Positions 1 to 17,749 of a stretch of DNA of 26,831 nucleotides are shown here, in pieces (position 1 is the stretch's first letter; every line of letters begins with the position of its first letter). The notes under the pieces are model-generated. The model did no database searches. It had not been told where the DNA came from and saw only the letters and a list, made by a program, of their open reading frames with translations. Source of the DNA: Vitrella brassicaformis CCMP3155. Its lineage: Eukaryota; Protista; Chromerida. The stretch covers positions 1 to 26,831 of the forward strand of contig CDMY01000727.1 in assembly GCA_001179505.1 (NCBI GenBank), read 5' to 3'. A program made the position numbers and the translations under genes.

Positions 1-20
1 GCCACGTCTGTCTTCGAGAT

Positions 21-83
21 CTGCATGTTTTTCAAGCTCCCGCCATTGTTGTCTGCATGTTTTTGAGACTCTCGCCATTGTTG
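21..83. repeat. Imperfect 32-bp tandem repeat x2 upstream of the first gene, containing TGCATG
   Basis: ctgcatgtttttcaagctcccgccattgttg at 21-51 and ctgcatgtttttgagactctcgccattgttg at 53-83. Confidence 0.8.
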
Positions 84-295
84 CATGCGTCGGTGTGCTT
101 CTCGCAAACACTCATGCTGTGCACGTCTCTGTGACGCATAATTGAACCACCACTTTGCACGCTGCTTTCGACCCCCGCCCAATTCGCGGCCCGGGGTGCC
201 CACGCAGTGGGTGCCCCTTACTCGGAATCGTGGATGGTCTGTAGAGCCGCAGCTGCCGTGTAACCAGACATATGGGTTCCCTACCCCGACGACTG

Positions 296-963
296 ATGAT
301 GCACAACAGCGACCTGGAGGACTCTGAGGACGAGATGGAGGCGCCCAAGCCGAAGAAGCAGCCCAAGGCCAAGCCCAAGGGGAAGGCGGGCGGCAAGCCG
401 GCAGCGGCGGCAGGCAAGGGCAAAGAGAAGAATGACAAGAAGGCACCAGCCGGCGCCAAGGGGGGCCGTCCCCCCAAGAAAAAGCAGGACGCTGCGAAGA
501 AGCGCAAGAAGGACTCAAGCAGCGACTTTGAGGACAGCGGCAGCGACCTGCCGGACTCTGATGAAGAGGAGGACTCTGAGGACGAGAGGAGGCCAGCCAA
601 GCAGAAGAAGCAGGCCAAGGCGAAACCCAAGGGGAAGAGGCGCAAGAAGGACGTCGACTCCAGTGACGACAGCAGTCTGTACGATCAACATTGGCTAGTC
701 TCCAAAATGTTATCCAGGTCGGTCCACCTCACGCACGCCACACCACATAACCTCACGATATCTATCACTGTCTTGGTGTGAGGTGTAGGTGGTGGTATAT
801 GACGCCCGACTGGCCGCCCGAGGATTTCGACTACGACGGCGTTCTGCGGAAGCTGAAGCTGCGTCGCGTGGAGGTCGACGAGTGGGAGAACGCAGAGGAC
901 TGCGAGGAGGGATACACCAAAGTCTACGAAATCAAACACTACAGAGGTGAGTGGGTGAGGTAA
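296..963 (+). CDS. Hypothetical protein: Lys/Asp/Ser-rich low-complexity N-terminus plus a short conserved-looking C-terminal domain (RWWYMTPDWPPEDFDY...KVYEI)
   Basis: ORF 272..781 (ATGs at 272/296/299) joins ORF 778..963 through a GT-AG intron at 718-788, giving ...KMLSR|WWYMTPDWPP. The 3' end is uncertain: either the stop at 961-963 or a further intron from the gtgagt donor at 947. Confidence 0.65.
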
Positions 964-966
964 CGC

Positions 967-2060
967 TCACTCAAACACCTTTGTCCTGCCCTTGTCAGTC
1001 TCACCGCGTTTGAGTTTGTCGCCCTTCGTCTTGATCTGTGGGTTAGCGCCCTTCTTGGCAACATGAACAGAGACACACACCAGCAGATCCACATCCACGC
1101 TGTCTTCTGTGTGGTGCCTTGCAGCCGGCCGATCAAATCCCATCGCAAACTGACTATCGTGACACTCATGTGAGAACACAAAATAGCAGCAGAGTGACCA
1201 TACGAGCGAAAGGAGAAGTGCGTTTCACTCCGACACAAAGTCGGTTTCTAATGAGAACGAATTCTTTTTTGTGTGTGCGTGTTGCCTTGCCTCTTCTGTG
1301 CTCACTCCTCGAAGAGTGTGCTCAGAATGCATCTGTGGATGAGCGCCCACGTGACAGACAGAGACACGACTCCCAAGTAATTGATCACATGGTGTTGTTT
1401 GCTCCAGTTATCTGCTTCTGCATCACCGCGCACCAGGCCCAACATTATTTAACGTTCGTAGAACCCGCTCATCCGTCCTCCCCCAGGAGCTACTAAACTC
1501 TCATGCACATTCGCTTATGAAACGAAAGGAGAGAGGCCATCGACTGAAAAGGAAGGAGCTGGCTGAGACGAACATTGGCAGGACCTGTACAGGTCTGTGA
1601 ATATAATAGTGTCGAGCCCTCCGAGTAACGGAAACAAGGAAATGGTGATTTACCGTACCCGACAAACAAGAACACACAGACACAGTGACAGTCACACAAT
1701 TTTTTGCTGACATTGTCACCGCGACCGCTCGCTATGTCTCGGAAAAGAGGGAAGAAGAATAAACGAGATCCATGTGAAAAGAGCTGAAGTACCTGTCGGC
1801 AAATCTCCATGTCTCAGAAGCCTCGACTGACCTTCGCTGTGTGTGTGTGTGTGTATAGCGACAGTACAGAGAAGATGAGGGTCATTTGGAGGACATAACG
1901 CCGCTTCCTCATGACAGTCGTCGATGTCAGAGCGACTTGGCGAAAGACCCTGCACGCACACACGAACGTAGACGCTGTTACTATCATCGCCGTCCAGTTG
2001 ATCGGAACGCTGACGGTACAGCATCTTTCGCGCATGGTATTGGTATTTGCCGAGATCTAG
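967..2060 (-). other. Possible additional 3' coding exons (extended C-terminal tail of the PDE gene, or a separate small gene)
   Basis: Exon-like segments with plausible splice sites, e.g. RRLDLGKYQYHARKMLYRQRSDQLDGDDSNSVY | GLSPSRSDIDDCHEE, and a Lys-rich end VAKKGANPQIKTKGDKLKRGETDKGRTKVFE* (stop at 967). I could not build a complete splice chain. Confidence 0.25.
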
Positions 2061-2218
2061 ACGACGTACAGGTGTGCGAATCCATGCAAGGCACTCCCTC
2101 CCTCCCGGCGGCAATTGGCACTTGGTGATTAAGCAAACCAACCATCCGTCCCTCATCCAGTATGTGCCTATAGGCACAACCAGGTCTTACGCAACAAGCC
2201 CACTGTCCTGTCTGCTTA

Positions 2219-5200
2219 TCAATGGATGTCTCTAAGCGTTCTCTGCTTTTCCTTGTGCCTGAGCTGCGTCCTGGTACGGGGCAGCCTCATGTGAAGCTTC
2301 AGAACGGCAGTCGCGGCAAAGTCGTCCGGTAGTGGGGGCAGCTTCTGCGTCCCCTTGCGCATCTCCTCGCAAATCGATAAGACGCTCAGAGACGACCAGA
2401 AATCCTTGTTGTATCTCATATGCGCCACGCACTCACGCATCTGTATCGACACCATCCATACCCACGGATGTGTACATATTTTAACTTTTTTTGCCAGGAA
2501 TGTCACCTGCGGAATAATCTCGCTCATCGCATTGTACAGCGGGGCTATGATGACATCGATGAAGCCACACTGAGACCGCGCGATGTTTGTTGTCTCTCTA
2601 TGTGGAAAAATCAAAGAGCCAACAGCGAGATCATCGGGAATCCCCTCTGACTCTCATCATCTTTCCCTTTGCTCTCACCGGTTCATCAGCGGCGAGATTG
2701 GCAGACCGAAAGCCTTTTCCCTATCACCTACATCAGCAAGACACTCTCCATCTGGTCAACCCACAATGTCATGAACAGCGGGCGGTTTTGAACCTTACCT
2801 TGTGCAAAGAACTCTTGTATCACTACCCGATTCACATCCGATTCACATCCGATTCACATCAAACCCGCTGGTCTCTTTCTCTCTGGCTTACCTTTGTCTG
2901 TCCACTGCAAGTACAGCGGCAGCGGCCGGCAGGGATTGGAGACATCAGCAGCGTGCACCACCATGCTCATGATCAGCAAGCGGTCCTCGCGGCTGAGCTC
3001 TTGCTTGAGCCACTCTGCCATACGGCGTTTCAACGGTAAGAATGAGGAGAAAAAGCTGCTGATGTGTAGATGCCCATTCTTAGTGGAATGATGTGCTGGG
3101 CCCCTTCGGGTCTAAGCCCTCCTTCTCCTAAGCCCTCCTTGTCTCTAGGCCCACCTTCGTCCTTAGTCTTCAGCAGTCCGAGTTTCACAAAATGCTGCGA
3201 CATGTCCGTAGCCAGCACCATATGGATGATCGCCTCGCGCACTAAAGCATCCAGCAAAGAAGAATACATATGTGTAGCACACAGGGCGTATAATGCATAT
3301 AGGCCACAGTCCGCACCTATGGAGTATGTTGCCGCTGGCGTGTGCTTGAAAATGTTGTACTTAGACTGTTGCATGAGCTGAAAGACTGCGGCGATATGGT
3401 GGCTCTCTAGCACGGCCTTGTCTGTCGCGCAAAGGAGACATGATTCATGTGCATACCACACGCATTTTTCAGCATACCATGTAGAGGATCGCGAGCGGGT
3501 CATTGGTCTTGATAAGGAAATTGTTGCTTACTCCAGGATGATCTGAACACCCACCGTTAACACACAGACAGCGCGCATGCACAGGAGCATCGTATGTCGT
3601 GCCATTGCTACCGTAGTCGTGTATGGCCGCCGAGAAGATCACGGTGAAGAGTTCAACCTAAGGTATACGGCAGAAAACGAGCACGCCAAGGTAACAGTGC
3701 AGACGACGAGAGGCGGCTTGGCAAAAATGTATTGAATACATTCGTGAAGCCCTTCAATGATAGCGACCAGAGTTCGCCCACTGCACGGGACAAAGACAGT
3801 CTTCATGCAGCCGTTTCTCTTTGCGTCTCCTACCTTTGCAAAACCAATAAGCTCCGTGAACAACCTGCGAAGATAAAAAGTGGTAGCCTCGTCCATTGGC
3901 GAAGGGCGCTGCCAGAGATGCAATGTGCGGCGCTGCGACTTACGTCAGCGGCATGCAGGCGCATGTGATAGGGATTGTCTTGATGATATCCCTTCTGCAC
4001 TGCAAAGAGTAGCTCATCCCACTTTTTGCAGTCAATACATAATTCCTGAGCAGGCCAGCTCATAATTATGACTGCCTGTCTCTTGTCGAGGCAGACCTCG
4101 AGTGCAAAGGAAGATTGCGCCACAAAGTTGGTGAGCAGCCGCAGACAGTTGCCTCTGACTCGAAAGCAGCCAGGTCACCTTTGAATGAACCACTGTGTGT
4201 GCATTCTGACGTCATACCCCGATAGCCTGTCGCATTCGAATACGTCGAATTCCCAATCATCGACTCCCGACAGAATGGTGTCGTTGACTGCCGATTCGGT
4301 CATGCACGACAGAATGCTCCTCGCACTGTCCCCTGACACACGGAGGGTCGTTCAACTTTGCATCCACTGATGTCTCTGCTCGCTTTCTTACTGGCGGATC
4401 GCTTCTGTCCGTCTCTGTCGTTTTGCACCTGCGTCTTCGATTTTCTGCGATACAAATACAGAAGAAGATTCACGTGTTTGGCGAGGCAACGTGAGTGAGG
4501 TAGTAACCGCGCCGATGCATGGTGCCCCAGTGCTTGTGAGGTGGTGTCGACAAGTAGACGAGGTCTGCACCCAGGCAGAGGCTGCATGCACACAGCGCAC
4601 ATACGAGAGAATATTGTTGCTTGACACTCGAGGACTTACCTGCACTGTTCTCATCGAGCCTGTCCTCATCGAGTATTGGCTGACATAGCCGATAGGTGAG
4701 ACACAGACACGTGGCAGACATTCATGCTGCACTACGGGTGCTTTCTCACATCATAGAGCCGGCCTGATGCGAGTATGCGTATGGCAAGATTGACATCATT
4801 GGGGAGACGATGACTCAACCGATACTCACCCTATACCAAGGAGGATCGAGAGAATCCGATGTCAACGAAGCCATGATCTCTCTTATACATCCCCCGGCCG
4901 ACCTTGACTTTGCGGAGTGTCTTAAGGACCTTCTCCAAAGGCGCTTCGTAGCACACGCCGCCTTGCTTCTTCTTTGCTAGCCCCAATGCAAATTCCTCTT
5001 GAAACTGAAAGAACGAGAACACATTTCACACACACACACACACACACACATGAGCATTTGTCACATACGCGTGTTGAGCATACCTGGTTGTATACATGAA
5101 GGAGACGAAATATACGCAGCACTCCTCTCATTCCTGAAAATGAACAGCGGCCATAAGACATATCCGTGTATGTCTCCATGCAACCCAGTGAGAGAGTGGC

Positions 5201-5790
5201 GGTACGTACGGGCAATGCGGTCCACTAGGTCGTCCTCTACACATGGACAGACATCTCAATGTGTAGACAATAAGTCAATACAATCCGTCTCACCTACCCA
5301 CCTATCGTGAGCGAGCCCAAGGAGAGGAAGAAGGCCAAAAGAACACACAGGATATCCACAGCATTCAGCGGCTCCAGGAAATAAAACCGGCCGAAGGCAA
5401 AGGCCTTTAGGCTGACTTTCAGGATGAAGATGCAACACAGTGTGAGGTCAATGACATCGAGGGCATGCATCTGCTGCGACGTGACGACATCGAAGACCAC
5501 CAGCTGGACGAATGTGAGAGATATATAGTTGAAGACCATGATAATGATGACCTCTGCGCAGCGGATCAAGACGGCGAGAGGCAGTTGTCCCTTCGCTCCT
5601 TACTTGCCCTCTTACTTTCACAGACAGGGTGGTCGATCACCCATCCGATGTTGGCCCTCAACGTTTCGTACCTCCCTCTTGGCCTCTCGTCTTCTGAATC
5701 ACTGGTACGTGGGGGCTGCACAGTGACAGAAGACGTGAGGGCTGAGGATGGGGCTGGCGGCACTGGCCCCAGAGGGGGATGCATTACCAT
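2219..5790 (-). CDS. Class I 3',5'-cyclic nucleotide phosphodiesterase with an N-terminal voltage-sensor-like (S1-S4) domain; about 22 exons, about 680 aa
   Basis: Manual exon chain, all GT-AG: 5790-5616, 5553-5302, 5236-5210, 5133-5084, 5004-4903, 4830-4750, 4679-4640, 4581-4429, 4332-4218, 4154-4097, 4045-3944, 3864-3834, 3780-3740, 3657-3612, 3542-3478, 3421-3317, 3241-3155, 3014-2892, 2822-2799, 2727-2679, 2597-2507, 2440-2219. Phases are consistent except for a 1-nt mismatch at 3478/3421. PDEase_I motifs: NPYHxxxHAADV, AIHDYDHPGVSNNFL, VLESHH, VLATDM, HAADVSNP, EFFAQGDRE, SQCGFID. Confidence 0.88.
2827..2859. repeat. Perfect 11-bp tandem repeat x3 (ccgattcacat) in a PDE intron
   Basis: Units at 2827-2837, 2838-2848 and 2849-2859. 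Confidence 0.9.
5084..5645 (-). other. Voltage-sensor-like domain (S1-S4) at the N-terminus of the PDE gene
   Basis: Spliced translation: S1 HPVCEKVIIIMVFNYISLTFVQLVVF; S2 ALDVIDLTLCCIFILKVSLKAFAFG; S3 FLEPLNAVDILCVLLAFFLSLG; acidic loop EDDLVD; S4 RIARMRGVLRIFRLLHVYN. There is no S5-P-S6 pore region after S4. Confidence 0.75.
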
Positions 5791-6665
5791 CTTCTCTTCA
5801 AACACTCAGAAGATGGACCACTTTGCAGGAGAAGTGGGGGTCTCGCAATTCTGAGAGGCGCACTTGCTTCCTTGAGAATCACTGGTGCGTGGGGGTGCGG
5901 GAGGGCTGAGGATGGGGCTGAGGATGTCAGTGGTGAAGTTCCCCGTCGCGAAATGCAAGCCACGAAGCTCTCATGGAAGCCAGAAAGGCGTACCGAATGA
6001 AAAAGTCTCGACTCTGCGATCCTCTAGTCCGTTTTGTAGCGAGGTGCGTGTCGAGCTGGTGTGTGTCGAGAGGACACATATACCACGACACACAGGTTTC
6101 TGGATCGATGGATGGATGGATGTATAGGTATTGCATTGCATACGGATGTTGTGTCCATAAAGGTCGTTTCCAGGTCGTTTCCACCATGAGCACCGACACA
6201 CACGCAATACCGTCGGTCCGTCCGTCCTAGAGCCAACTACCCCCGGCAAAGCACAGCAGAGGAACGTCATCCAGCCATCAATCCATCCTAGACCCACAAG
6301 ACGGACAGACAGACAGAACAATCAATCAACCAACCAACCAGCCGGCCAGCCAGACAACCAACGTCATACAAATAGCACCTAGTTCCATCCATCCATCAGC
6401 CGCGTCAAGAGTGAGCCAGGACAAAACAAAACCACTCAGAGAGAAAGAGAGAGAGAAAGCTACGCGTGCATCGGTTGTGCGTAGGACAAGCACTGCTGCC
6501 CCTTTGCTACGTAAAGGAGGAGGGATGTTGTCGAAACACGGAAAACATATCCCCGTCCCCCGTCCCTCCCTCCCTCCCTCCCCTGTGCCAGCCATCTTCG
6601 TCAGGTCAGCCAGACCGACGGCAATGGACACCTAGCTATCGATGTATAGATGTGTGTCTATCTAT

Positions 6666-8221
6666 CTAATTGGCCCCTTGCCTCTCCCCTCCCCCCTCTC
6701 TCTGCTCTTCCCCCTCCCCTTCGGCGTCGTCTTCTTGGCCATCGTCACCGTCACGCAGCGGCGACAGATCGCAGCTGCTCATGGCCGCCAAGGGGCACGG
6801 GCGCAAAGGGGGGCTGAACGACGGAGGGGGCGGGATCGACACCGCTGCGAGATCATGACCATGATCATGATCCTGCTGCTGATGTCCCTGCTGGGGGGAA
6901 GAGGTGTCCTCCCCGCCGTCTTGGCGTGAGTCCGTGTCGACGGCATCGTCGTGGGACTCTTCTTCTTGCTCGTCCGCGTATCTATGTGGTTCGGAGCAGT
7001 CGAAGAAGGGGTGGAAGCAGCGGGACGGCAGGAGGGGCCCGGGGCTGGCCGGCGGGGTGGGCACGCGGGGGTCGGGGCTCAGGAAGGACGGCACCGGGCT
7101 CGCGTCATGGGCAGGGATCTGCACCCGATCCCACTCCATGTGACGACGCAGCAACCGCGGGCCCTTATCCCTCTCCCCCTCCCTCCCCGGCTGGTCGGTC
7201 TGCTCATCGAAGAATGCGGCCAGTGTGCTGTGGTCGAATCGTCGAGCGGGTTGGTAGAGGGGCATGGGTTGGTCGGGTGGCGGCGGGGGCGGGGGGAGGT
7301 TGGCGGGGTCGGGCTTGTGCAGCCGACGGGTGCGGTCGACGATGTGAAGGTTCCTCACCACGTTGTCGCGCCACTTGATGCGGGTCCACGAGTAGACCTG
7401 CACGCGGCAGTTGGGGCACGTTATGGGCGTCCGCTGCCGGGCCCAATTCAACATGCACTGCACACACACATCACATCCACAGACAGAGATACCCATCCAG
7501 CCATCTGTGTGTGGCTGTGTGTGGCTGTGTGGGCGGTTGGCTGGGCTGCTTGCCTTGTGGTGGAAGAGGTGTCCGCATGCGAGTCGTATGACGCGTTGCG
7601 AGGGCTGCTGGTTGAGCCGATGCAGGCAGATGGTGCACTCCTTGCGCGAACACTTGGACAACACGTGGTTCTGACTGCACACACACAACACAACACGACG
7701 CAACAGACAGACACAGGGAGACAATCCATCCCACCATTTCACATACATCATTTTACCCCGGCCCAGCCCAGCCCCAACCAAGCGCACCGTTCGTTGCATC
7801 TGAGAGTGTTCCATGGCGCAGCAGACGCCATACAGCCACTGCTCGAACCGCTGCCCAAACTCGGTCCGGAAAAAGGCGTTGAGCGCATGCTCCCACCACG
7901 ACGTGTTGCTCCCGCCCGTCGTCGCCACCGCACCTCCTCCATCTGCCTCTGCCTCAGCATCTCCATCGCTCGGCGACTGGGCGTCCTCCAAGTCCCCCAC
8001 CTCGTCGAGCAGGCCGGGGCCGTCGTAGCCGTCGAGGTAGTCGGCCTCCATGAGCTGGAGACCAGCAGCAGCTGGTGCTCGTCCGCCTCGGTCTCTCCTC
8101 CATTGCTGCCAGAAATGGCCGAGCCGCCCTGGAACTGCTGGGTGGACGTGGCTGTCGACTCGGTGGCGCCAAAGGATGACGATGACCCGTCGGCCAACCC
8201 ATCTACCGAAGCCTCATCCAT
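6666..8221 (-). CDS. RING-H2 (C3H2C3) zinc-finger protein, probable E3 ubiquitin ligase, with Pro-rich and acidic C-terminus
   Basis: CTIC-x17-CGHLFHHK|CMLNW...TCPNC after removing in-frame introns 7671-7787 (GT-AG) and 7458-7553 (GC-AG). The 5' ORF from ATG 8221 joins the main ORF only through a 1-nt shift near 8078; the alternative start is ATG 8051. Confidence 0.8.
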
Positions 8222-8889
8222 CGCTGCTGCTACTTGTAGGTAGAGTGCTGGACGGCTGCTCTTGCGTTCGCTTCCTTTCAGGCCGTCGAACGCTGGTCTA
8301 CTCGTCTACGCCGTGCTGCCCTTTTATCGTTCAGCTCCTCTTGAGTACTGTTTCACGCCGATTTGCCCGAAAAAGTTGCGGGGTTTGCATGCCATGCATC
8401 ACGATGTAGCGCATTGCAACTCATCCATCATACTTTGTCCTTCGACATAAACTCCCATCGGGAGGACATACATGCACATGAGCAATAGCGTCGGGCACGC
8501 ACCACGCACAGGGCAGGTCGCGAGAGGTCGCCTCGCATGCATTTGCATCGGGCGACAGGCAGCAGATCGTTTGCACATCCACACAGACATGAATGCTCAT
8601 CAAAATCGTATGCACATGATGCATACAGGCGAGTGGGCAGTCAGTCAAAACGCCCCAAAATCTCGCACAGATAAAAAGCAATAGAGACAGCACAGGCACC
8701 TGGCACGTTCATGTCATGAGTATGGGTGTTGTGTCATTGTTAACCTTCCTGCCTAGGATGCCCAGATGGTCGTGACCATAGTGAAGTCAGCGCCCACACA
8801 CAAAAGGGCATACACATGATACGTACGCCTGTATTTATGTATATATATGTACACGCACATAAAACGCATGTACACACCCCGCACCCTAT

Positions 8890-10092
8890 CTACAGCCAGC
8901 TGCCTTCCTTCCTCGCAGCCATCTGTACAGCACTCCAGACCTCGCCGAACCACCGGCCGTCGGACCCCACGGCCATCCTCCCCATCACCTCCCGCACCGA
9001 TGAGGCTGTCGGCCTCACCCGAGCCAGCACCCTCTCCATGCCCTCGCTCACCCACCCTCTCAGCTGACCACGGACGATGTCGACCCCTGCCCAGGAGGGC
9101 AATCGCGCAGCTTCGCGTGTCTTCTCGTCCGCACCTGGATCTGCCCTCGGCTGCTGCATGAGGCTAAGACGCGACTCAGGGTACGTCTGGCAGGCGTCGA
9201 TCATCCTCTCCAGAGACTTAGGCAGGACGAACGATGCGCCCCACCGTCTGATTATGGAAGGTACGCCCTGGGTTTGGCCCTCTACGTAGAATGACGAGAA
9301 GCTGCTGCTGCGGGATGGGTGGTCTGGGTCGGGAGTGATGGCGATGACGTTCATGTACTCGGATACGCGCGTGACGCCATCCTTCGGAGGCTTCACGTCA
9401 CTGGCGTCCGGAGATGCTGACGGATCGACAGAGAAGCGCCAGGTGGTAAGGCTTGTCGCGGCGTTGTTTGCTGCATACCTACCTACCTACCTTGGTTGAC
9501 GACCAGGAAGGTCTCACTGTTGTGGTGTGGCCCCTTGACACGCACACACCGCTGCGTGTAGACATAATCACGGTCCTGCACAGAACAATCGCACCAACGG
9601 CAAGTGATTGTAGTCTGTGCCGTTCGTGCGACGGCAAGACACACCGGCCCTCATGCTCATGTGTCTGACATTGAATGGTCCAGGGAAGGGCATCCGCCAG
9701 TACACGACCTTCTCCCCACTGGAGGGCAGAGTGAACGTCTGCACAACACAACAAAAATCGCAGAACAATTATGAGCAAGATGCTTCTGTTTGATGTGATA
9801 TGATAAACCAGTGATTGACCTCGAGCTGTGCGGCGTTTCGGTCCCATGTCTTGCGATGGTCAGAATCACAGTTGACCGCCCAAAGCACTTCTGGCGGTGA
9901 AGCGATGGTCCCTTTGGCGAACACCTCCACCCTCCCGGCGGCATCATCGCTGCCTTCGAACACCTCAACAGCGCTGCTGTCAGGCCGGCGCAACGACGTC
10001 AGCTTCCGATGCGACTCAGCTGGCAGCCGCTTCAGGAGCTCAGCGTACTTGGCGTCATCAGCTACGGCGACAGAAGAGGTCACGGACGGCAT
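8890..10092 (-). CDS. START (StAR-related lipid transfer) domain protein
   Basis: Exons 10092-9820, 9738-9670, 9575-9491 and 9470-8890 splice in phase. START-like motifs: RKTWDRN, KVVYWRMPFPGPFN-DRDYVY, PPKDGVTRV, QGVPSIIRRWGASFVLPKSLERMIDAC. Confidence 0.8.
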
Positions 10093-10279
10093 GCCAGAAT
10101 CGTATATCGGGGACAGGAAGAGAGCGGAGCGTCGCGGACAAGGAGGAAGGAGCCGTGTGTGGGGATATAGGAGGGAACGGCGTTCTTCCCCCTTCCCCGC
10201 AGAACTGCGCTGGCAAATTCTTGAGCTCGCAGGCATATCCGGGGAGTGTTGCTGAATCCGTTAGAGGCGAGTTGATCAG
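10093..10279. promoter_or_regulatory. Putative bidirectional promoter (START gene / DMT transporter gene)
   Basis: Divergent start codons at 10092 (-) and 10280 (+), 187 bp apart. Confidence 0.55.
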
Positions 10280-11895
10280 ATGGCTGTGAACGTCGGCGGC
10301 CTTCTTGTTGGCGCCTTGAGTGCAGTGTAAGTCGAAAAGAGAGCAACGCCGACATCCATGGGCATCAAGGTCATCGTGCTGTGGATGTTTCTGGCTTGAA
10401 ACGCTGCAGATTCAATGGATCCTTTGCTGCCGTCATGAAGTAACTAGGCGCTGGCTGCACTGCATTCATCGACGGGGGGACTCATCTGTGCGTGCTTGGC
10501 TCTGATGCTGCCTGTCTGCCTGGCTGTGTGTGTGTGTGTGTGTGTTTCTGGCTGTCTTACATTCGCAGGTTCGTCCGTGTGCAGCTGGACGAGATGGTAC
10601 GATCCACCAACGGAGGAAATGTCATTCATTCGCAGCTGCATTGGCAATGCCCGTTGTCTGGCCGACCTTCCAGGTGTTCATGACGTACTGCTGCCTCGGC
10701 GTGGCGCTCAGCTCCATCATTGCACTGCTGTTCCTGCCCCTCAACGACACGATTGCGGGTGCGGGAGTGGGTACCAGCCTCGCCTTCACCTCGTATGGGT
10801 TGGCTGCCGGCGCCTTGCTCGTCGGTGCGTTCACCTTCTCCTTCCTAGCTGGTAGGTACGAACCAACCAACCAACCAACCAACGAACGGACAGACAGACA
10901 GACAGACAGACAGACAGGCGGCCTCACCCCATTAGCGAAGAAGCGCAGCGCGTGAGTCGTTCGTTCTCTATCGTGCTGGCTGTGCCTGTCTGTCTGTGTC
11001 ATTCATAAATTTCAGTCGCGAAGGCGGGTGTGTCGATAGGTCAGGGTGTATGGTGCGGGACGGCCATCATCGTGTCTTACCTATGGGGCACTCTGGCATT
11101 CGGCGACGTCATTACCAATGTGCCCCTCAACCTCATTGGCTTGGTTCTCCTTCTCGTCGGCTCCACGGGCATCGCTTTCTGCCAGGAGCTGCCCAGATTG
11201 ATGGCGCAGACATTCACCACCAGCGGCACCACTGCTGGCAGCGGCGCCAACGAGCAGCAGATGCGGCAAGAGGACTCCAACCAGCGGGAGCCCCTGACAC
11301 GCGACACAGATGACGCAGACAGGGGGCGGCCATCGTCCCCTCATCATTCGTCAAGCAAGCTGGTGGGGCTGGGTGTGTCGGTCCTCACTGGGGTGTTCGG
11401 CGGTTCCATCCTGGTGCCCAAGCACTACGTCCCCAAGAGTGCCGACGGGATTGCCTTTCTGCCGTCATTTGCCGTGGGTGTGGTGGCCTTCATGGTGCTA
11501 GTCATGGGCGTCTATGTGACGGTCATCACCAAGCGGCGTGTGCAGTGGCATGTGCAGGCGGCGCTGCTGCCCGGCCTCATTAGTGGCTGCCTGTGGAACC
11601 TCGGCAACATCTGCTCGATAGCGGCCATCCCAAGGCTGGGCTACTCGGTGGCCTATCCCTTGCTGCAATGCGCCCTGCTTATCTCTGGGTCAGTCAGAGT
11701 GCGTTGGTGAAGAAAAACGATGCGCAGCATAGAATGGGCATGGTGTGCTTGTCTTCTTCTCGACTCGACAGGCTGCTGGGCATTGTGGTGTTTCGCGAGG
11801 TGCGGCAGCCGGCGGCCGTGAGCTGCTTCTGGGGCTCAAGCATTGTGCTCATCTTGGGCGCCGTGCTGCTGTCACTCTCCAGCCATCCCAAGTAG
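10280..11895 (+). CDS. TMEM144-like drug/metabolite transporter (DMT) superfamily membrane protein, about 10 TM
   Basis: Exons 10280-10326, 10410-10439, 10569-10596, 10674-10851, 11016-11688 and 11772-11895 splice in phase. Motifs: VFNGSFAAVMK, GVSIGQGVWCGTAIIVSYLWG, PGLISGCLWNLGNICS, GYSVAYPLLQCALLISGLLGIVVFRE. A hydrophilic loop separates two hydrophobic halves. Confidence 0.8.
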
Positions 11896-12465
11896 CTAGC
11901 TGCGATATGAACAGACATGAAGATAGACAGACATACAGACAGGCGGAGATAGTAGACAGAGGGAGATAGAGGCAGATAGAGGGAGACAGAGGGAGAGGAG
12001 GGGAGCGGTTGGTAAAGAGATGGATACTTTCTGCGGTAGCTAGCCTAAGCGCACAGAGGGCTGTGAAGACAAATGTGATGTAATGTGAGGAAGGAAGAGA
12101 AGGGCAGCCATGCTATCTGATATCGATGTGTGTGATGTGTATGTGTATGTGTGTGTGTGTGACGGTGTGTCTTCTTTTATACGTCTGTACAGCCCCCCGA
12201 GTACCCATGCGTAGCATGGGACGCTCGGTCCCTGCGTCAATCGCTCAATGCTCGTGTTCTCGGTGTCAGTCAATCAAATCCCTAGCTACTCACTGACATA
12301 CCATCGCTGCAGCTGACCGGCGAGCAGCACGCAGCGGTCGCATTCTCCATCTGATAGTATCACAAGTCTGTCGCAGGGAATCCAGATCCAGCCCTAGCCA
12401 TGGCGAGGCTCCCTTCTTAGCCACAGGCTCGCAGGCCTCTCGCGTTCGCGACGTTCGCGTCAAAA

Positions 12466-14283
12466 ATGGCGGACAGCAGGAGGGGAATAAGCTCTCCTCG
12501 GTCATCTCCCTTCCAGTTCCAGCCTCCAGTCGACCCTCAAGACGATGAACAGATGCCGCCAGCCGCCGAATACGAAGGAGATGGTGCGTCTGGACGTGCG
12601 CAGACAGACAGTGGCAGCAAGCCAGCCAAGAAGCGACGAGTGAGGGAGAGTACGGACAACAACGGCGGCGTGCCGGACTATCCCAGCGGCTCGGGCAACT
12701 GTGTGCCGTCTTCACAGCAGCAGCAGCAGTTCTACCTGACAGCAGCGCAGAAGATCGACCTGCACACGCGCAACTACGTCGCCGAGTCTGAGGGCAAGGC
12801 GTACGAGAACGGGCTGGTGATCCTCACGCGCAAGTTCTTCGCCCTCTTGGAGATGTGCCCGGGACAGACGGTGGACCTCAACACGGCCGAGCATGCACTC
12901 GATGTGCAGCGTCGCCGCCTGTACGACATCGTCAATGTGCTCGAGGGCATCGGCATCATCGAAAGGGTCGGCAGACACTCATTCAGATGCGCGTAAGCAA
13001 GCAAACAGAGAAGCAGACAGACAAGGACGGGAGGAGGCCAGTGAGAACGGCATTCCATCGTGTGTCATATCTATGTCTGTGTGTGTGTCTGTCTTTCTTC
13101 CCTGGCTGGCTGCAGTAGGCGTCTTCCCTCTCTGTTGTCGTGCGGTGCCCAGATGGAGTCTGAGCTGGCGGTGCTGCAGGCCGAGAACGACCAGCTGGAC
13201 AGACAGCTCGCCGAGATGGAGGCATATCAGGACAGAAAGTGGCAACTCGCCAAGGACCAAGGGTAAGTAAATGGGAAGAAACACAGACAGAGAGGGGAGG
13301 GGAGGGGGCGGTCATATTGGGTTGATATGTGTGTGTGTGTGTGTCACACCAGGTTGTTGTACATCAGTGGCGGTGACATTCGTGACACCGTGGACTATCG
13401 GGCCAAGACCATCGCGCTCGTCCATGCCCCCAAGGATGCGTCGGTGGCCGTCGTCTGCGACGCACTCCCAGACAACGCCGTCCAGGTACACACACGCGAT
13501 ACAAAACCACAGAGGGGCCCGTATGTTCGTCGCTCTTGTGTGTGTGTGTGTGTGTGTGTGTCAGGACATTCCTCGTTTCGTCCAGTTCAGCTCTCCGAGC
13601 GAGCGCATCCACATGACACACATCAGCGGCAAACAGTACAGGGTCCGCTAACAGTCATGGCTTCGTTCGTTCCCTCCTTGCTTCTGACTGATCGATCACA
13701 TGTCCGATTCGATTCAGCTGGTGGTTCACGACCCTTCGCAGAGCAGCAGCAGCACCCCCTTTCCGCCCGGGATCTTCCCCTCGCCCATCGAGCACCTGTG
13801 CGCCATCCACGGCATCAACGCAACGCCATCACACAGGGGAGAATCGCCCATACCAGCCATGCACGAGGGGGGAGCCGCAGCGGCAGCGGCAGCGGCAGCG
13901 GAGTCGCCACTCGCGTCAATGCTGGCAGCAACAGGCAAGTGGGTGGAGGGGGGGACACACCAACGAAGGAACGGAAGCGACAGGCACACTGACTGTTGGT
14001 TGTGTTGTGTGGTGGCTGGCGTCTGGGACCAGGGTGTATTCGGCAGCCGACGGACACGCGAGTCAAGAGGGACAGAAGCAGGAGTGCAGCACGGGCAGAA
14101 GGTAAGTACGTGCGTATGTCAATCGGTGTCATTCGTCCATTCCGATCGCGTGATGAGTGTTGTTCTTCCTCTCTGCGTTGGGGTGGGTGGATTGGCGGAT
14201 GACTGGCTGCAGCGATGGGCCTCCTCTCGGCGATCAAGGAGGAGGCAATGGATGACGATTATTATGATCAAAGTAGCTACTAG
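12466..14283 (+). CDS. E2F: E2F-family transcription factor (single winged-helix DNA-binding domain, coiled-coil/marked-box region)
   Basis: DBD GLVILTRKFF...RRRLYDIVNVLEGIGIIER. Heptad-rich ESELAVLQAENDQLDRQLAEM. Marked-box-like LLYISGGDIRD...TIALVHAPKDASV. NLS-like KPAKKRR. Exons 12466-12992, 13116-13262, 13353-13485, 13565-13642, 13718-13934, 14032-14101, 14213-14283; the last three are less certain. Confidence 0.88.
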
Positions 14284-15017
14284 CCGAAAGATGTAGATCC
14301 CGCTTTGTTGTGTGTGCTTCGTCCGTCGAGAGAGCAGGGGTGCAGTGCAGGGGCCCCCCAGCCATTCATCCATCCATCCCCTCATGCGTGTGGCGAGCGG
14401 GTCAAGACATCCATGCACACAGGTGCACACGGCGATCCATCTGGCGAGTGGGCGGCGTGCATGTGTGTGTGTGTGTGTGTTTGTTCGTGCGGTTGGAGGG
14501 AGGGATTCACAGGTGTTCACGGACAGATGAATCGCTAAACCAATGAACGTTCCCATCGCACTCACTCACAGCTGCGCACACGTCTCGTGCAGCCGCCATC
14601 CATCCATCCATCCCCAACACGCACACAACCACAACCAGTGAGATGTGTCAGATTGGTCGGGCGTGCTCGTTGAGTGGCGCCGGAGAGAGACGTGCATGTC
14701 GCTGGGCGTGTACGCGTGCCAAATTACTGCAGATGTATGCATTCAATCATATAGTCCCATAGACGGTCCTTCGCCCCTCCCTCCCTCCCTCCCTCCCTCC
14801 GGCAAATTGACCCATCCATCATCCCTCCATCCCTCCATCTATCGGCCGGTCTACATGCATCTCCATATGTGACCGTCCATCGGCCGGTATGTCGAAATAA
14901 TTCCATCCATCCATCCGGAGAGGCGCCTATCAGTGTGCCTGATTCTATGCTCTCTCTACCTATGCTACACCACACCCCCAAACACCCTCGGTCTCTCCCT
15001 CCCGTCCTTCATCGATT

Positions 15018-17749
15018 CTACTGCCCGTCGACGTCAGGTGCGGCCTCTCCAGCGATCTCTCGCACATACGCCGACGGCAAGTAGCCTGCAGGCACGCCGA
15101 CACACACATGGTCATGGTAATGTGGTGGTTTGTTTGTGGCTTCGCTGCCTGCTTACCCATCGCAGCGGTGTCGTTGTTCCGGGCGAGAAACCAGCCGTTA
15201 TCCGCCACGCTCAAAACGTCCTTGACACACACACACACACACACATACACACAGAAAGGCACAGCCAGACAGCAAGAGAGACAACAACCATCCATCCATC
15301 AGTTGGCACGACGACCGATGCCATCCATCCACGAATGCCCTTGTGTATTCTGTGCGCCGTACCCCCAGGTACCAGTATCTGCCCCTTTTCGATCTCGAGG
15401 CAGCTGTCGCCGGCGTAGTCTTCGCTCTGAGGCCCGTAGTCATACAGCACCTCACATCGGAACCTGACGAAGCCGTCGGCACCCGCCCCGCCACCTCCAG
15501 TGCCATGAGCGTTGGCCGACTCTACCACCGCCACTTGTTGCTGCTGCTGCTGGGCGTTGAGCTGCTCGGTGAGGGACTGGATGCTGGCCTGCATGGCCTC
15601 CTGCTCTCGCTGCTTCTCCTCCCTCAGCTGCTCGAGCTGACGCTGCAGCGCGTTGCGCTCCTCCTGGACCTCATGCAACCTGAAAACCACACACACCAAC
15701 AAACAATGGCGATGGCGGCGTGAATCAGTCGGTTCTTGTCTCATGCTCGAACTCATGCTGTGCGGTGCAGTAGTCGCTGTGGTCTGCTTCCTGGCTGAGC
15801 TGACTGAGGAACTTACTTGGCCTGCAGCTCAAACACCTGGAGACTCAGACCCTGGGTGTGGTTCATTTGCGCCTGCACGTAGTCCTTCAGAGCGCCGAGC
15901 CGCGCAAACACTGGCCCCAAGCTGTCCAGCTGCGCCAGCACAGCTAATGCATCCGGTGCAGCCATCAGCGGCACCGGCACCGGTGCCGGTGCTGGCGGGC
16001 CCATGTGTACGCCGCCCGATGGGAGCGGTGGGAACCCCTCCGCCCCCGCCACGCCGTTGTGCTGCTGCATCATCGCATGGCCGCCACCACCGCCCTCTCC
16101 GGCGTGCTGCTGCTGCTGCTGCTGCTGATGCTCCTGGTGCTGGTGTGGCTGGGGCTGCATGGGCACCATGCTGGTCAAAGCACCTCCATCTGGCGCCCAC
16201 ATGGCCTCCCCTGCTGCTGCCGGGCGGGCCGATGGGTCATACGCGACCTGATGGTATGGTGCCCCGCCCACAGACATCATGCAGCAAAGGGTCAGATCTC
16301 GATTGATTACCCACAGTGTGGGCTGGGCTGGGCCTTGCCTTTTCACCCACCTACCTCATGTGCCAGCGATGAACTGCTGTTGACGTTGGCCTGCTCGTCC
16401 TGCTGCATCTGCACCTCTACCTGCAGCACCTCCACCTGCACCTCCCCCTCCCCCGCCCCAACGGCATGACTCGCCGCAGCCGAGCCGCCACCGTCACACG
16501 CCGTCGACATGCTGGACGAATTCGCATACGTCGGTCGGTTGTCCACAGCTGGCGGCGGCATGTTCGGCGGCCCCCCAACGCCCACGCCGCCATTGGGCTT
16601 CTCGGGAGGGCGCATCAGTGGCTTCGGGGGCAGCACCGGCACCTCCTCGGTGGTGGGCGTCAAGTGCTGGTCTGTGGTGGGCGGCGAGGGCCCGACTGGC
16701 TCGGGCACTGGGAGTGGCATCGAGGGCGGTGTGGGTGCGGGGACGGGAGGCGCCTCGTGGGATGGGGGGACGGACGGCCGGGCGGGGGGCGCCTTAGGGA
16801 GATGTGGCTTCTGCATGACCTGCGTGGCCTTGGCGTACTCTGCCGCACCTATCAAACTCTTCTGCACACACATAACATGACAAAGCATAACACGGCACAA
16901 CGGGATACAGCGACGTCATCTATGGGCACGGTGGTGTGGTGTGGGCTACCAGATCCGCCAAGGTGAAGTTGCCGATTTTCATGTCGAGATCATAGGGCCG
17001 GATGTCCTTGACGCTGCAGACCTCGCGGCGCAAAAACAGCAAGGCAGGCCCGTAGACCCTCACCTCGGGCTTCAGCTGACACGAACGGCAAACCACACAG
17101 ACAGACAGACAGACACGCACTCGTCAGGCACATAGGCTCCTGTCCCTATCTTATGTGCCTGAGTGGCGGGCCTATTTGCTGCCCGCCTGCCTACTTGGAG
17201 CTTTTGTTGTTTGATGGCCTCTACGACAACTTCTGTGGCAAACTTGTTAAGGGGCCCGCCGCGGTGGGTGTTGAAGACCAAGATGGGCAGGCGGTCCGAC
17301 TCGCTGTCCGTATACCTGCACACACACATACACGCACACACGCAGCGGCCATCCTTCCCCTCCCGCTCCGCATTCGTGTGTGTGTAAGTGGGAAGGGTGG
17401 TGTGGTGCTGTCTGGTGTGGCGGGTGGTTGACTCACGCAGGGAATATGGTCAGTTCGATTTGCGATGGGGTCTTGCCCGACATGGTGCCAATTTGCAACG
17501 CGCAGGTCCTGCGCCACTCGTCCGGCCCATTCCGCGGCTGCAGCCACAACGAGAAGGAGGAACACACACATCCACCCTCGTCTACACATCCCTGAGCAAG
17601 TCCCTGAGCTGCAGGCACGCCTCTCTCGTGTGTTCCAGTCCTCACCCACCCACCTTGACAGAGGGCACTTTGGCAGATTGGAGATCCATCTTGCCCTGCA
17701 CGGGTGGCACGTTCGGCTGCAGGACGACGTAGGAGATCGTTTTCGACAT
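15018..17749 (-). CDS. SH3-domain protein: unknown ~170-aa N-terminal domain, Pro-rich and Gln-rich linkers, coiled coil, C-terminal SH3
   Basis: Spliced C-terminus RCEVLYDYGPQSEDYAGDSCLEIEKGQIL|DVLSVADNGWFLARNNDTAAM|GYLPSAYVREI...* (stop 15018-15020) matches the SH3 pattern ALYDY...GW...G.P.xY. Coiled coil LHEVQEERNALQRQLEQLREEKQRE. The N-terminal exons from ATG 17749 splice in phase, including a 21-nt microexon at 17588-17608. Confidence 0.78.

What the first reader, a model, noticed from the sequence alone, without database searches (positions are those of the whole stretch)
2219..5790. Voltage-sensor domain fused to a cyclic-nucleotide phosphodiesterase: candidate voltage-sensing PDE
Seen in sequence: a phase-consistent exon chain joins four hydrophobic segments to a complete class I PDE catalytic domain. 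The segments have voltage-sensor hallmarks: S2 with Asp and the Phe of IF, S3 NAVD, an acidic S3-S4 loop EDDLVD built partly from a 27-nt microexon, and S4 RIARMRGVLRIFRLLHVYN with periodic Arg/His. A basic linker (LAKKKQ) and a helical segment (APLEKVLKTLRKVK...LAIRILASGRLYD) follow. The PDE keeps its metal ligands (H of HAAD, HD, D of ADVSNP), the general-acid His and the invariant Gln (SQCGF). There is no pore domain. Established: pore-less VSDs control an enzyme in voltage-sensing phosphatases (Ci-VSP/TPTE), alveolate ACalpha fuses an ion-channel-like module to adenylyl cyclase, choanoflagellate Rh-PDE fuses a rhodopsin to a PDE, and apicomplexan PDEs carry multi-TM N-termini. Inference: this may be an enzyme coupling membrane potential to cAMP/cGMP hydrolysis. 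I know of no functionally characterised example.
Basis: partly seen in the sequence, partly recalled or inferred. Interest (0 to 1): 0.92.

Follow-up and report, generated by a model that had tools for sequence, protein, structure and literature searches.

The report
Frame-broken voltage-sensor–phosphodiesterase gene in Vitrella
This gene of the alga-like alveolate Vitrella joins a real four-helix voltage-sensor domain to a cAMP/cGMP phosphodiesterase on one transcript and belongs to an untested alveolate family, but this copy has a one-base frameshift that cuts the enzyme in two.

Summary
The window is contig CDMY01000727.1 of Vitrella brassicaformis CCMP3155. RNA contigs confirm the minus-strand GT-AG exon chain, including the 27-nt microexon, and place voltage-sensor and PDE exons on one transcript scaffold.

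The N-terminus is a pore-less S1-S4 voltage-sensor domain (VSD):
- Pfam Ion_trans scores above threshold.
- The AlphaFold model best matches the Ci-VSP sensor (TM 0.76/0.79).
- No S5-S6 follows.

The PDE motifs are all present, but the chain is not phase-consistent.
- At exon joint 3478|3421 the mRNA is one base short, giving ...LAILYM-TRPC-stop.
- The public annotation splits the locus into a 405-aa protein (CEM31578.1) and a 217-aa PDE tail.
- A near-identical paralogue carries one extra A and reads LYNDKAVLE.
- The S2 acid of the charge-transfer centre is Lys here, against Glu in 9 of 9 relatives.

Eight intact full-length Ion_trans+PDEase_I proteins exist elsewhere, plus a 248-member, mostly ciliate, Atlas cluster. 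[quoted passage not shown] No paper tests voltage control.

Verdict: a real but probably decaying member of a known-by-annotation, functionally unexplored family. Two other first-stage notes flag similar loci in this genome.

The parts
5788..5970 (-). 5'UTR exon ending in the start codon ATG (5790-5788). Intron 1 is 5787-5716.
   Evidence: L001 aligns 1-183 to 5970-5788 at 100%. X1 contig joins 5788 to 5715.
5616..5715 (-). Exon 2: cytoplasmic N-terminus (PPRTSDSEDE...DHPVCE).
5302..5553 (-). Exon 3: S1, S2 (F77, K80 in place of the family Glu, K84) and S3 (N98, D101).
   Evidence: Pfam Ion_trans E 7e-4 on the exon alone. Atlas features 0.93 to Ion_trans fragments. Alignment A3.
5210..5236 (-). 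27-nt microexon: acidic S3-S4 loop and start of S4 (DDLVDRIA).
   Evidence: RNA joints 5236|5302 and 5133|5210. L001.
5084..5133 (-). Exon 5: rest of S4 (MRGVLRIFRLLHVYNQ). Basic residues are R125, R128, R130, R134, R137 and H140 of P0027.
4903..5004 (-). Exon 6: post-S4 basic stretch (LAKKKQ) and start of the conserved linker (APLEKVLKTL).
   Evidence: Aligns to family motif SSPVE.V.DTL.
4750..4830 (-). Exon 7: linker helix (LAIRILASGRLYD). The family motif is SGGKLYE.
4640..4679 (-). Exon 8: linker.
4508..4581 (-). Exon 9: linker with the family motif ASAWV.
4392..4444 (-). Exon 10. The long form (donor GT at 4391-4390), seen in transcript L001, puts exon 11 out of frame. The short form 4444-4429 (donor GT at 4428-4427), used by the annotation, is in frame.
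4218..4332 (-). Exon 11: start of the PDE fold (WEFDVFECDRLSG).
3944..4154 (-). Exon 12a (4154-4097) and 12b (4045-3944), with a 51-nt in-frame intron (4096-4046) that is both retained and spliced in L001. It ends in PYHMRLHAAD (general-acid His and first metal His).
3834..3864 (-). Exon 13.
3740..3780 (-). Exon 14. Upstream of about 3749 the near-identical paralogue diverges.
   Evidence: (loose ends at 3657 and 3749)
3612..3657 (-). Exon 15: FSAAIHDY (HD metal motif).
3478..3542 (-). Exon 16: DHPGVSNNFLIKTNDPLAILYM. It is one base shorter than in the paralogue, which has an extra A between 3480 and 3479 on the minus strand.
   Evidence: (tables 4, 5, 5c)
3407..3421 (-). Frame break and premature stop. 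After joint 3478|3421 the frame reads TRPC then TAG (3409-3407). This is the end of the annotated 405-aa protein.
3317..3421 (-). Exon 17 in the PDE frame (DKAVLESHHIAAVFQ...). The second annotated model (217 aa) starts at the ATG at 3374.
3155..3241 (-). Exon 18 (VLATDMSQHF).
2892..3014 (-). Exon 19 (HAADVSNP, metal-binding Asp).
2799..2822 (-). Exon 20.
2679..2727 (-). Exon 21.
2507..2597 (-). Exon 22 (SQCGFID, invariant Gln).
2219..2440 (-). Last exon with stop TGA (2221-2219).

Best explanation
The locus is a transcribed but frame-disrupted paralogue of an alveolate family. In that family a pore-less S1-S4 voltage-sensor domain is joined to a PDE1/PDE4-like class I cyclic-nucleotide phosphodiesterase. 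The join is a long S4-contiguous helix followed by a conserved, roughly 110-190-residue helical linker.

In intact members the most likely mechanism is inferred, not shown. S4 carries 3-4 conserved Arg. It would move through a canonical charge-transfer centre (S2 Phe and Glu, S3 Asp) when membrane potential changes. That movement would pass through the linker to relieve or impose inhibition of the catalytic domain. Membrane potential would thereby set cAMP/cGMP breakdown.

In this Vitrella copy a one-base deletion at the end of exon 16 truncates the protein after the HD motif (405 aa). The rest of the catalytic domain is left in another frame on the same mRNA. Together with the Glu-to-Lys change in S2, this marks the copy as most likely a recently inactivated gene, while a near-identical paralogue keeps the frame.
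For: Shown.
- Splice junctions and a single transcript scaffold.
- The exon model reproduces the annotated CEM31578.1 exactly.
- The same premature stop appears in the genome, in the annotation and in RNA of X1, X2 and L001.
- A variant copy with one extra A restores LYND (tables 4 and 5c). The family consensus there is RYNDKAVLE.
- Ion_trans is above threshold: 30 and 27.7 bits against a cutoff of 25.
- The family VSD profile hits Ci-VSP at E 5e-13, Hv1 at 5e-12 and CatSper at 1e-11.
- The AF2 model has pLDDT 78. Foldseek's top hit is Ci-VSP 4g7v with TM 0.76/0.79 and rmsd 2.4. TPTE and TPTE2 top the Swiss-Prot models.
- No hydrophobic segment follows S4.
- Eight full-length relatives carry both Pfam domains. 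One Atlas cluster has 248 members, 73% with Ion_trans, mostly ciliates.
- Glu is present in 9 of 9 relatives at the S2 position, and Lys here.
- The window keeps 69 of 91 family-invariant columns.
Against: - All catalytic residues downstream of the break are intact, and those exons are still accurately spliced.
- Differences from the paralogue are 6 non-synonymous to 7 synonymous, which suggests recent or continuing constraint.
- A canonical AG five bases downstream (exon starting at 3416) would restore the frame as LYM|AVLESHH. Assembled contigs cannot exclude a minor productive isoform.
- Voltage dependence of any family member is untested.
- The full-length AF2 model is unreliable in the linker (pLDDT below 50), so the coupling path is unknown.
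Confidence: 0.65

Rival explanations
1. The locus still makes a full-length VSD-PDE. A minor isoform would use the short exon 10 (donor at 4428) and an alternative acceptor five bases downstream (exon starting at 3416). This gives one ORF of about 640 aa that lacks two loop residues (the N-D-K of the family becomes M-A).
For: - Both alternative sites are canonical GT/AG.
- The annotation already uses the short exon 10.
- Downstream catalytic motifs are intact.
- The non-synonymous to synonymous ratio against the paralogue is 6:7.
Against: - Every RNA source seen (X1, X2, L001) uses acceptor 3421.
- The annotators ended the model at the premature stop.
- The conserved YND loop would be shortened.
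- The S2 Glu is lost.
Confidence: 0.15
2. The frameshift is a sequencing or assembly error, and the real gene is intact.
For: - The missing base lies in an AA dinucleotide.
- DNA contigs of X3 and X5 over 2831-3630 show only the form with the extra A.
Against: - RNA contigs of two runs and the JGI transcript scaffold carry exactly the window's sequence at the joint.
- The X3/X5 contig differs at 13-15 other positions. Its depth (35.6, against about 23 + 22 for the two forms elsewhere) fits a second copy whose twin bubble was dropped by the assembler. This is my inference.
Confidence: 0.07
3. At family level, the S1-S4 module is only a membrane anchor or targeting or dimerisation module. It could also be a sensor of something other than voltage, and PDE activity would not be voltage dependent.
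For: - Many apicomplexan PDEs carry multi-TM N-termini with no known sensing role (PMC10865986).
- S4 has only 3-4 conserved Arg with an irregular register (R..x4..R..x3..R).
- TMEM266 shows that a VSD can exist without a known output (PMC13095418).
Against: - The charge-transfer centre (Phe-x-x-Glu in S2, Asp in S3), the S4 arginines and the linker are conserved across relatives only 24-35% identical. A simple anchor would not need that.
- The sequence and fold are closest to working sensors: Ci-VSP, Hv1 and CatSper.
Confidence: 0.35

Closest known systems
Toxoplasma gondii TgPDE4 and TgPDE16 (alveolate 'clade B' PDEs)
   Same: [quoted passage not shown]
- The clade includes free-living alveolates such as Vitrella, and human PDE1 (PMC10865986).
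- Both are functionally uncharacterised with respect to the TM module.
   Different: - I did not test orthology, because no Toxoplasma sequence was fetched.
- The papers speak of ion transport or cation channels, not of a pore-less voltage sensor.
- The Vitrella copy studied here is frame-broken.
Voltage-sensing phosphatases (Ci-VSP, TPTE/TPTE2)
   Same: - An N-terminal pore-less S1-S4 sensor is followed by a cytosolic enzyme.
- It is the best structural match to the window's VSD (4g7v TM 0.76/0.79; TPTE and TPTE2).
- It gives the best single-domain sequence score to the family profile (52 bits).
   Different: - The enzyme is a PTEN-like lipid phosphatase, not a PDE.
- From general knowledge, the VSP linker is a short basic phospholipid-binding motif. 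Here about 190 residues of conserved helices separate S4 from the PDEase_I core.
- The two enzyme parts share no common ancestry.
Sperm Na+/H+ exchanger SLC9C1
   Same: A VSD controls a non-channel protein through a long S4 helix that reaches into cytoplasmic helices, and it is linked to cyclic-nucleotide signalling (PMC13095418). It is also among the Foldseek hits (8pd9).
   Different: The output is a transporter and the cyclic nucleotide is an input through a CNBD. Here the cyclic nucleotide would be the substrate.
Rhodopsin-PDE of choanoflagellates, and the alveolate ion-channel-like adenylyl cyclase
   Same: The logic is the same: a membrane sensor module fused to a cyclic-nucleotide enzyme.
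   Different: The sensor is different (retinal protein; channel-like 6-TM module with pore). Neither was compared by any tool here. The resemblance rests on general knowledge only.

Membership tests
Class I cyclic-nucleotide PDE (Pfam PDEase_I, PF00233) | Significant match to the PDEase_I profile | tested here: met
   Four exon pieces score E 3e-6 to 2e-12, each above 24.8 bits. P0027 scores 66 bits on profile positions 1-68 only.
Class I cyclic-nucleotide PDE (Pfam PDEase_I, PF00233) | Metal-binding and catalytic residues: YH..H(AAD), HD, D of (A/C)D(V/I)SNP, invariant Gln | tested here: met
   PYHMRLHAAD, AIHDYDHPG, HAADVSNP and SQCGF are all present in the conceptual translation. The assignment of their roles rests on established PDE4 structures (general knowledge).
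Class I cyclic-nucleotide PDE (Pfam PDEase_I, PF00233) | Catalytic domain encoded in one continuous reading frame | tested here: not met
   There is a frame break at joint 3478|3421 with a stop four codons later. The annotation splits the locus into 405-aa and 217-aa models.
Voltage-sensor domain (S1-S4 of Ion_trans, PF00520) | Profile match restricted to S1-S4 | tested here: met
   P0001 scores 30.0 bits and P0027 27.7 bits (cutoff 25), on profile positions 7-110 of 241. Relatives score 40-52 bits.
Voltage-sensor domain (S1-S4 of Ion_trans, PF00520) | Four-helix antiparallel fold superposable on solved VSDs | tested here: met
   The AF2 model has pLDDT 78.3. Ci-VSP 4g7v_S matches at TM 0.76/0.79, rmsd 2.4 A over 131 columns, and all other listed hits are VSDs. 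Caveat: the model is a prediction from a 10-sequence alignment.
Voltage-sensor domain (S1-S4 of Ion_trans, PF00520) | S4 with basic residues at every third position | tested here: met
   R125, R128, (G131), R134, R137 and H140, plus R130. R130, R134 and R137 align with the conserved family Arg.
Voltage-sensor domain (S1-S4 of Ion_trans, PF00520) | Charge-transfer centre: S2 aromatic + S2 acid + S3 Asp | tested here: not met
   F77 and D101 are present, but the S2 acid is K80 in this copy. It is Glu in 9 of 9 relatives. So the feature is met in the family but not in the window copy.
Voltage-sensor domain (S1-S4 of Ion_trans, PF00520) | Gating charge movement on voltage steps | not testable with these tools
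   Needs electrophysiology.
Voltage-sensing enzyme of the VSP type | VSD and enzyme in one polypeptide without a pore domain | tested here: inconclusive
   Met in eight relatives, with no hydrophobic S5-S6. In the window the enzyme part is interrupted by the frameshift.
Voltage-sensing enzyme of the VSP type | Enzyme activity depends on membrane potential | not testable with these tools
   No paper reports it for any PDE.
Voltage-gated proton channel Hv1 | Asp selectivity filter in mid-S1 and an RxWRxxR S4 (general knowledge) | tested here: not met
   S1 (VIIIMVFNYISLTFVQLVVF) has no acidic residue, and S4 has no Trp.
Alveolate clade B PDEs with partial Ion_trans (TgPDE4/TgPDE16) | Same two-domain architecture | tested here: met
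   Architecture shown. The literature description is in PMC8809380 and PMC7720076.
Alveolate clade B PDEs with partial Ion_trans (TgPDE4/TgPDE16) | Phylogenetic placement of the catalytic domain within clade B | not tested
By sequence the PDE domain of relative P0003 is nearest to PDE4 and PDE1 structures.

The most novel reading that the evidence does not exclude
The Ion_trans+PDE proteins of ciliates, chromerids and coccidia are true voltage-regulated phosphodiesterases. That would make them a second class of voltage-sensing enzyme after VSP, turning membrane potential directly into cAMP/cGMP breakdown, for example in cilia, zoospores or microgametes. The Vitrella locus would be a recently decayed, or splice-rescued, copy of it.
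Probability: 0.35. Interest if true: 0.85.

Novelty: new member of a known kind. Interest (0 to 1): 0.58.

Why it matters
Only one enzyme class, the voltage-sensing phosphatases, is known to be driven directly by an S4 voltage sensor. A 2024 review of voltage sensors lists Hv1, TMEM266, SLC9C1 and VSPs, and no PDE (PMC13095418).

The family brought to light here conserves the gating-charge arginines and the charge-transfer centre. It is spread over ciliates, chromerids and coccidia. In the parasitology literature it has been noted only as an 'ion transport domain'.

If it is voltage-controlled, it would give a direct route from membrane potential to cyclic nucleotides in organisms whose swimming is governed by both. 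It would also be a candidate scaffold for a voltage-to-cNMP tool.

This particular locus is the wrong copy to test, because it is frame-broken. An intact relative or the Vitrella paralogue should be used instead.

Tried and rejected
- Whole-library phmmer with the S1-S3 exon found only 3 proteins. It was useful, but it shows how diverged this copy is.
- The search for homologous proteins with the annotated 405-aa protein returned only PDE-domain relatives and no Vitrella paralogue.
- The search for related loci failed twice. The VSD alignment was not conserved enough, and P0027 found nothing in metagenome contigs. The paralogue's sequence was therefore never obtained. It is known only from contig differences and loose ends.
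- The full-length AlphaFold model of relative P0003 had pLDDT below 50 through the linker and pTM 0.57. No coupling geometry can be read from it, and it was not searched further.
- I first took exon 10 to exon 11 as a second true frameshift. I then found that the annotation's shorter exon 10 (donor at 4428) is in frame. It is therefore better read as alternative or unproductive splicing than as a lesion.
- I first proposed a 51-nt intron at GCA|GTCATA. The real one is GAG|GTCTGC...GCTCAG| (4096-4046).
- Hv1-like proton channel: rejected (no S1 Asp, no RxWRxxR).
- Programmed frameshifting: considered and set aside. There is no slippery or stop-codon context at the break, and no evidence for it.
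- Phrase searches for a voltage-sensing, -dependent or -gated phosphodiesterase found no paper.
Full report
**Identity of the window**

An exact-sequence cluster look-up shows that the N-terminal part of the gene is GenBank protein CEM31578.1 (UniProt A0A0G4GN65). It is labelled 'PDEase domain-containing protein' of Vitrella brassicaformis CCMP3155 and sits on a contig of 26,831 nt, which is the window itself. The assembly record is GCA_001179505.1, contig CDMY01000727.1. Vitrella is a free-living photosynthetic relative of the apicomplexans.

**Gene structure**

- All reading is on the minus strand.
- Logan contigs of two RNA runs (X1, X2) lie on the region with joints whose skipped parts begin CT and end AC on the plus strand. 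These are GT..AG introns of 56-140 nt on the minus strand.
- L001, a 1621-nt transcript scaffold from a JGI sample, matches the window exon by exon at 100% from the 5'UTR (5970) to exon 18 (3198).
- L001 has one internal run of N inside exon 12. On either side of it the 51-nt intron 4096-4046 is present once retained and once spliced.
- My exon list translates exactly to the annotated 405-aa protein.
- The 27-nt microexon 5236-5210, the S4 exon 5133-5084 and the start codon split from exon 2 by intron 1 are all supported by RNA.
- The voltage-sensor exons and the PDE exons are therefore on one transcript.

**The frame break**

- With these junctions the chain is not phase-consistent.
- Exon 16 ends ...CTC TAC ATG and exon 17 begins ACA AGG CCG TGC TAG. 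The frame that reads DHPGVSNNFLIKTNDPLAILYM therefore runs into TRPC-stop. The PDE frame (DKAVLESHHIAAVFQ...) continues one base off, down to the real stop at 2221-2219.
- The public annotation shows the same thing. One model of 405 aa ends at this stop. A second model of 217 aa starts at the ATG at 3374 and carries the rest of the PDE domain.
- The RNA contigs of X1 (depth 10.9), X2 and L001 have exactly the window's sequence at the joint. The missing base is therefore not an assembly slip.
- A second form in X1 RNA (depth 9.2) and in the DNA contigs of X3 and X5 has one more A. It reads LYNDKAVLE, which is the family consensus RYNDKAVLE.
- That form differs at 13-15 other positions in 800 nt. 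Upstream of about 3749 it turns into unlike sequence, with an upstream exon that encodes a different peptide (loose ends). I read it as a paralogue sharing a recently duplicated or converted 3' half. This is inference.
- Exonic differences between the two forms are 6 non-synonymous and 7 synonymous.
- L001 carries two further frame problems. It uses a long exon 10 (donor at 4391) that is out of frame with exon 11, and it has a 2-nt deletion in a GTGT run. The annotation's short exon 10 (4444-4429) is in frame.

**The transmembrane part**

- Spliced S1-S4 passes Pfam's Ion_trans threshold (30.0 and 27.7 bits against 25). The match covers only profile positions 7-110 of 241, which is S1-S4.
- A profile of ten family VSDs hits solved sensors. 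Ci-VSP scores E 5e-13 (52 bits, the best single-domain score), the Hv1 chimera 5e-12, CatSper2 1e-11 and NavMs 2e-11. It also hits each of the four sensors of Cav3 and Nav channels.
- An AlphaFold model of residues 1-143 of the window's own protein (pLDDT 78, pTM 0.65) has four long helices plus a short N-terminal one.
- Its best Foldseek match in the PDB is the Ci-VSP sensor (4g7v_S: TM 0.76/0.79, rmsd 2.4 A, 131 columns). Every other listed hit is a voltage sensor.
- Among Swiss-Prot models TPTE and TPTE2 lead, followed by CatSper, Hv1 and TMEM266.
- No hydrophobic stretch follows S4, so there is no pore domain.
- S4 has R125, R128, R134, R137 and H140 at every third position, with G131 in the gap, plus R130. 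The S2 Phe (F77) and S3 Asp (D101) are in place.
- The S2 acid that completes the charge-transfer centre is Lys (K80) here, whereas all nine relatives have Glu.

**The family**

- The whole-library search with the S1-S3 exon found one full-length relative, P0003 (694 aa). It has Ion_trans at E 1.5e-13 and PDEase_I at E 6e-79.
- Word-indexed searches added P0004-P0007 and P0009-P0011. All are single ORFs on 2-5 kb contigs, apparently transcripts, with both domains.
- The window's conceptual translation, with X at each break, aligns with them over its whole length. The alignment includes linker motifs (SSPVE.V.DTL, SGGKLYE, EASAWV, ERWDYDMFELDRL) and keeps 69 of 91 family-invariant columns.
- The ESM Atlas holds a cluster of 248 'Phosphodiesterase' proteins, with PDEase_I in 100% and Ion_trans in 73%. 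Most members with a known phylum are ciliates. It scores 0.97 against P0003.
- By sequence the catalytic domain of P0003 is nearest to solved PDE4 and PDE1 structures.
- Two other first-stage notes report similar loci elsewhere in this genome. I could not read them.

**What is known**

- Vo et al. [quoted passage not shown]
- Moss et al. [quoted passage not shown]
- A 2023 review puts these two in a clade B with human PDE1 and free-living alveolates, and says they are expressed only in cat stages (PMC10865986).
- None of these papers treats the module as a voltage sensor.
- Phrase searches for a voltage-sensing, -sensitive, -dependent, -gated, -activated or -regulated phosphodiesterase found nothing in 8.4 million papers and preprints. 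Neither did the pair 'voltage-sensing domain' with 'phosphodiesterase domain'.
- The 2024 review 'Voltage sensors' covers Hv1, TMEM266, SLC9C1 and VSPs and never mentions a phosphodiesterase.

**Mechanism**

- Shown: the fold, the architecture, the conservation of the S4 arginines and of the charge-transfer centre in the family, a long helix continuing from S4 (helix 118-153 of the full-length model), and the intact PDE active site in relatives.
- Inferred: S4 movement is passed through that helix and the conserved linker to the catalytic domain. This would resemble the way N-terminal modules gate other PDEs, and the way VSP and SLC9C1 use the S4 extension.
- The full-length model is unreliable in the linker, so neither the direction of regulation nor the contact surface can be given.
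- For the window copy, the product of the observed mRNA is a VSD plus linker plus about 70 residues of PDE. It cannot bind both metals or the substrate. The copy is most likely decaying, although a splice-rescued minor isoform cannot be excluded.

**Verdict**

The claims of a phase-consistent, complete PDE and of an unnoticed architecture do not hold. The idea of a voltage-sensing PDE is still open and worth testing, but on an intact family member.

Noticed in passing
window 5691-5756 and 5871-5920: A short local duplication. Two segments of the 5'UTR exon (88% and 96% identical) repeat the end of intron 1 and the start of exon 2, including the PPRTSDS-coding stretch.
   Followed up: partly
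window 2827-2860: Perfect 11-nt tandem repeat (3.1 copies, CCGATTCACAT on the plus strand) inside the intron between exons 19 and 20. There is also a (CA)12 microsatellite at 5027-5050 in the intron after the S4 exon.
   Followed up: no
window 3361/3241 joint (paralogue transcript in X1): The paralogue-type RNA contig, which carries the extra A, uses an alternative donor at 3360 that skips 119 nt instead of 75. By my count this puts the next exon out of frame, so it is possibly unproductive splicing of the sister gene.
   Followed up: partly
L001 660-661 (corresponds to a GT lost from the GTGTG run at window about 4959-4955): The JGI transcript scaffold lacks 2 nt of a GTGT run relative to the window. 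That shifts the frame just after S4, and is why the database holds a 151-aa fragment (P0001). Whether this is a strain difference or an assembly slip is unresolved.
   Followed up: partly
window 2362-2389: In X1, X3 and X5 every contig over this stretch differs from the window in the last exon; X2 carries both forms. The differences are a CTC insertion after 2362 and substitutions at 2371 (Cys to Arg) and 2389 (Leu to Met). The reference may therefore carry a minority form here.
   Followed up: no
rest of the contig (L004 = window 1-15790, reversed): Annotated neighbours are an SH3-domain protein, an E2F/DP winged-helix protein, a TMEM144-like transporter, a START-domain protein, a RING-finger protein, and an unannotated 231-aa ORF downstream of the PDE. 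None has an obvious functional link to the PDE.
   Followed up: no
genome-wide (first-stage notes): The same genome has notes on PDEs fused to pseudo-histidine-kinase/receiver modules and to 4-5 GAF domains. This suggests a large and architecturally varied PDE repertoire in Vitrella.
   Followed up: no
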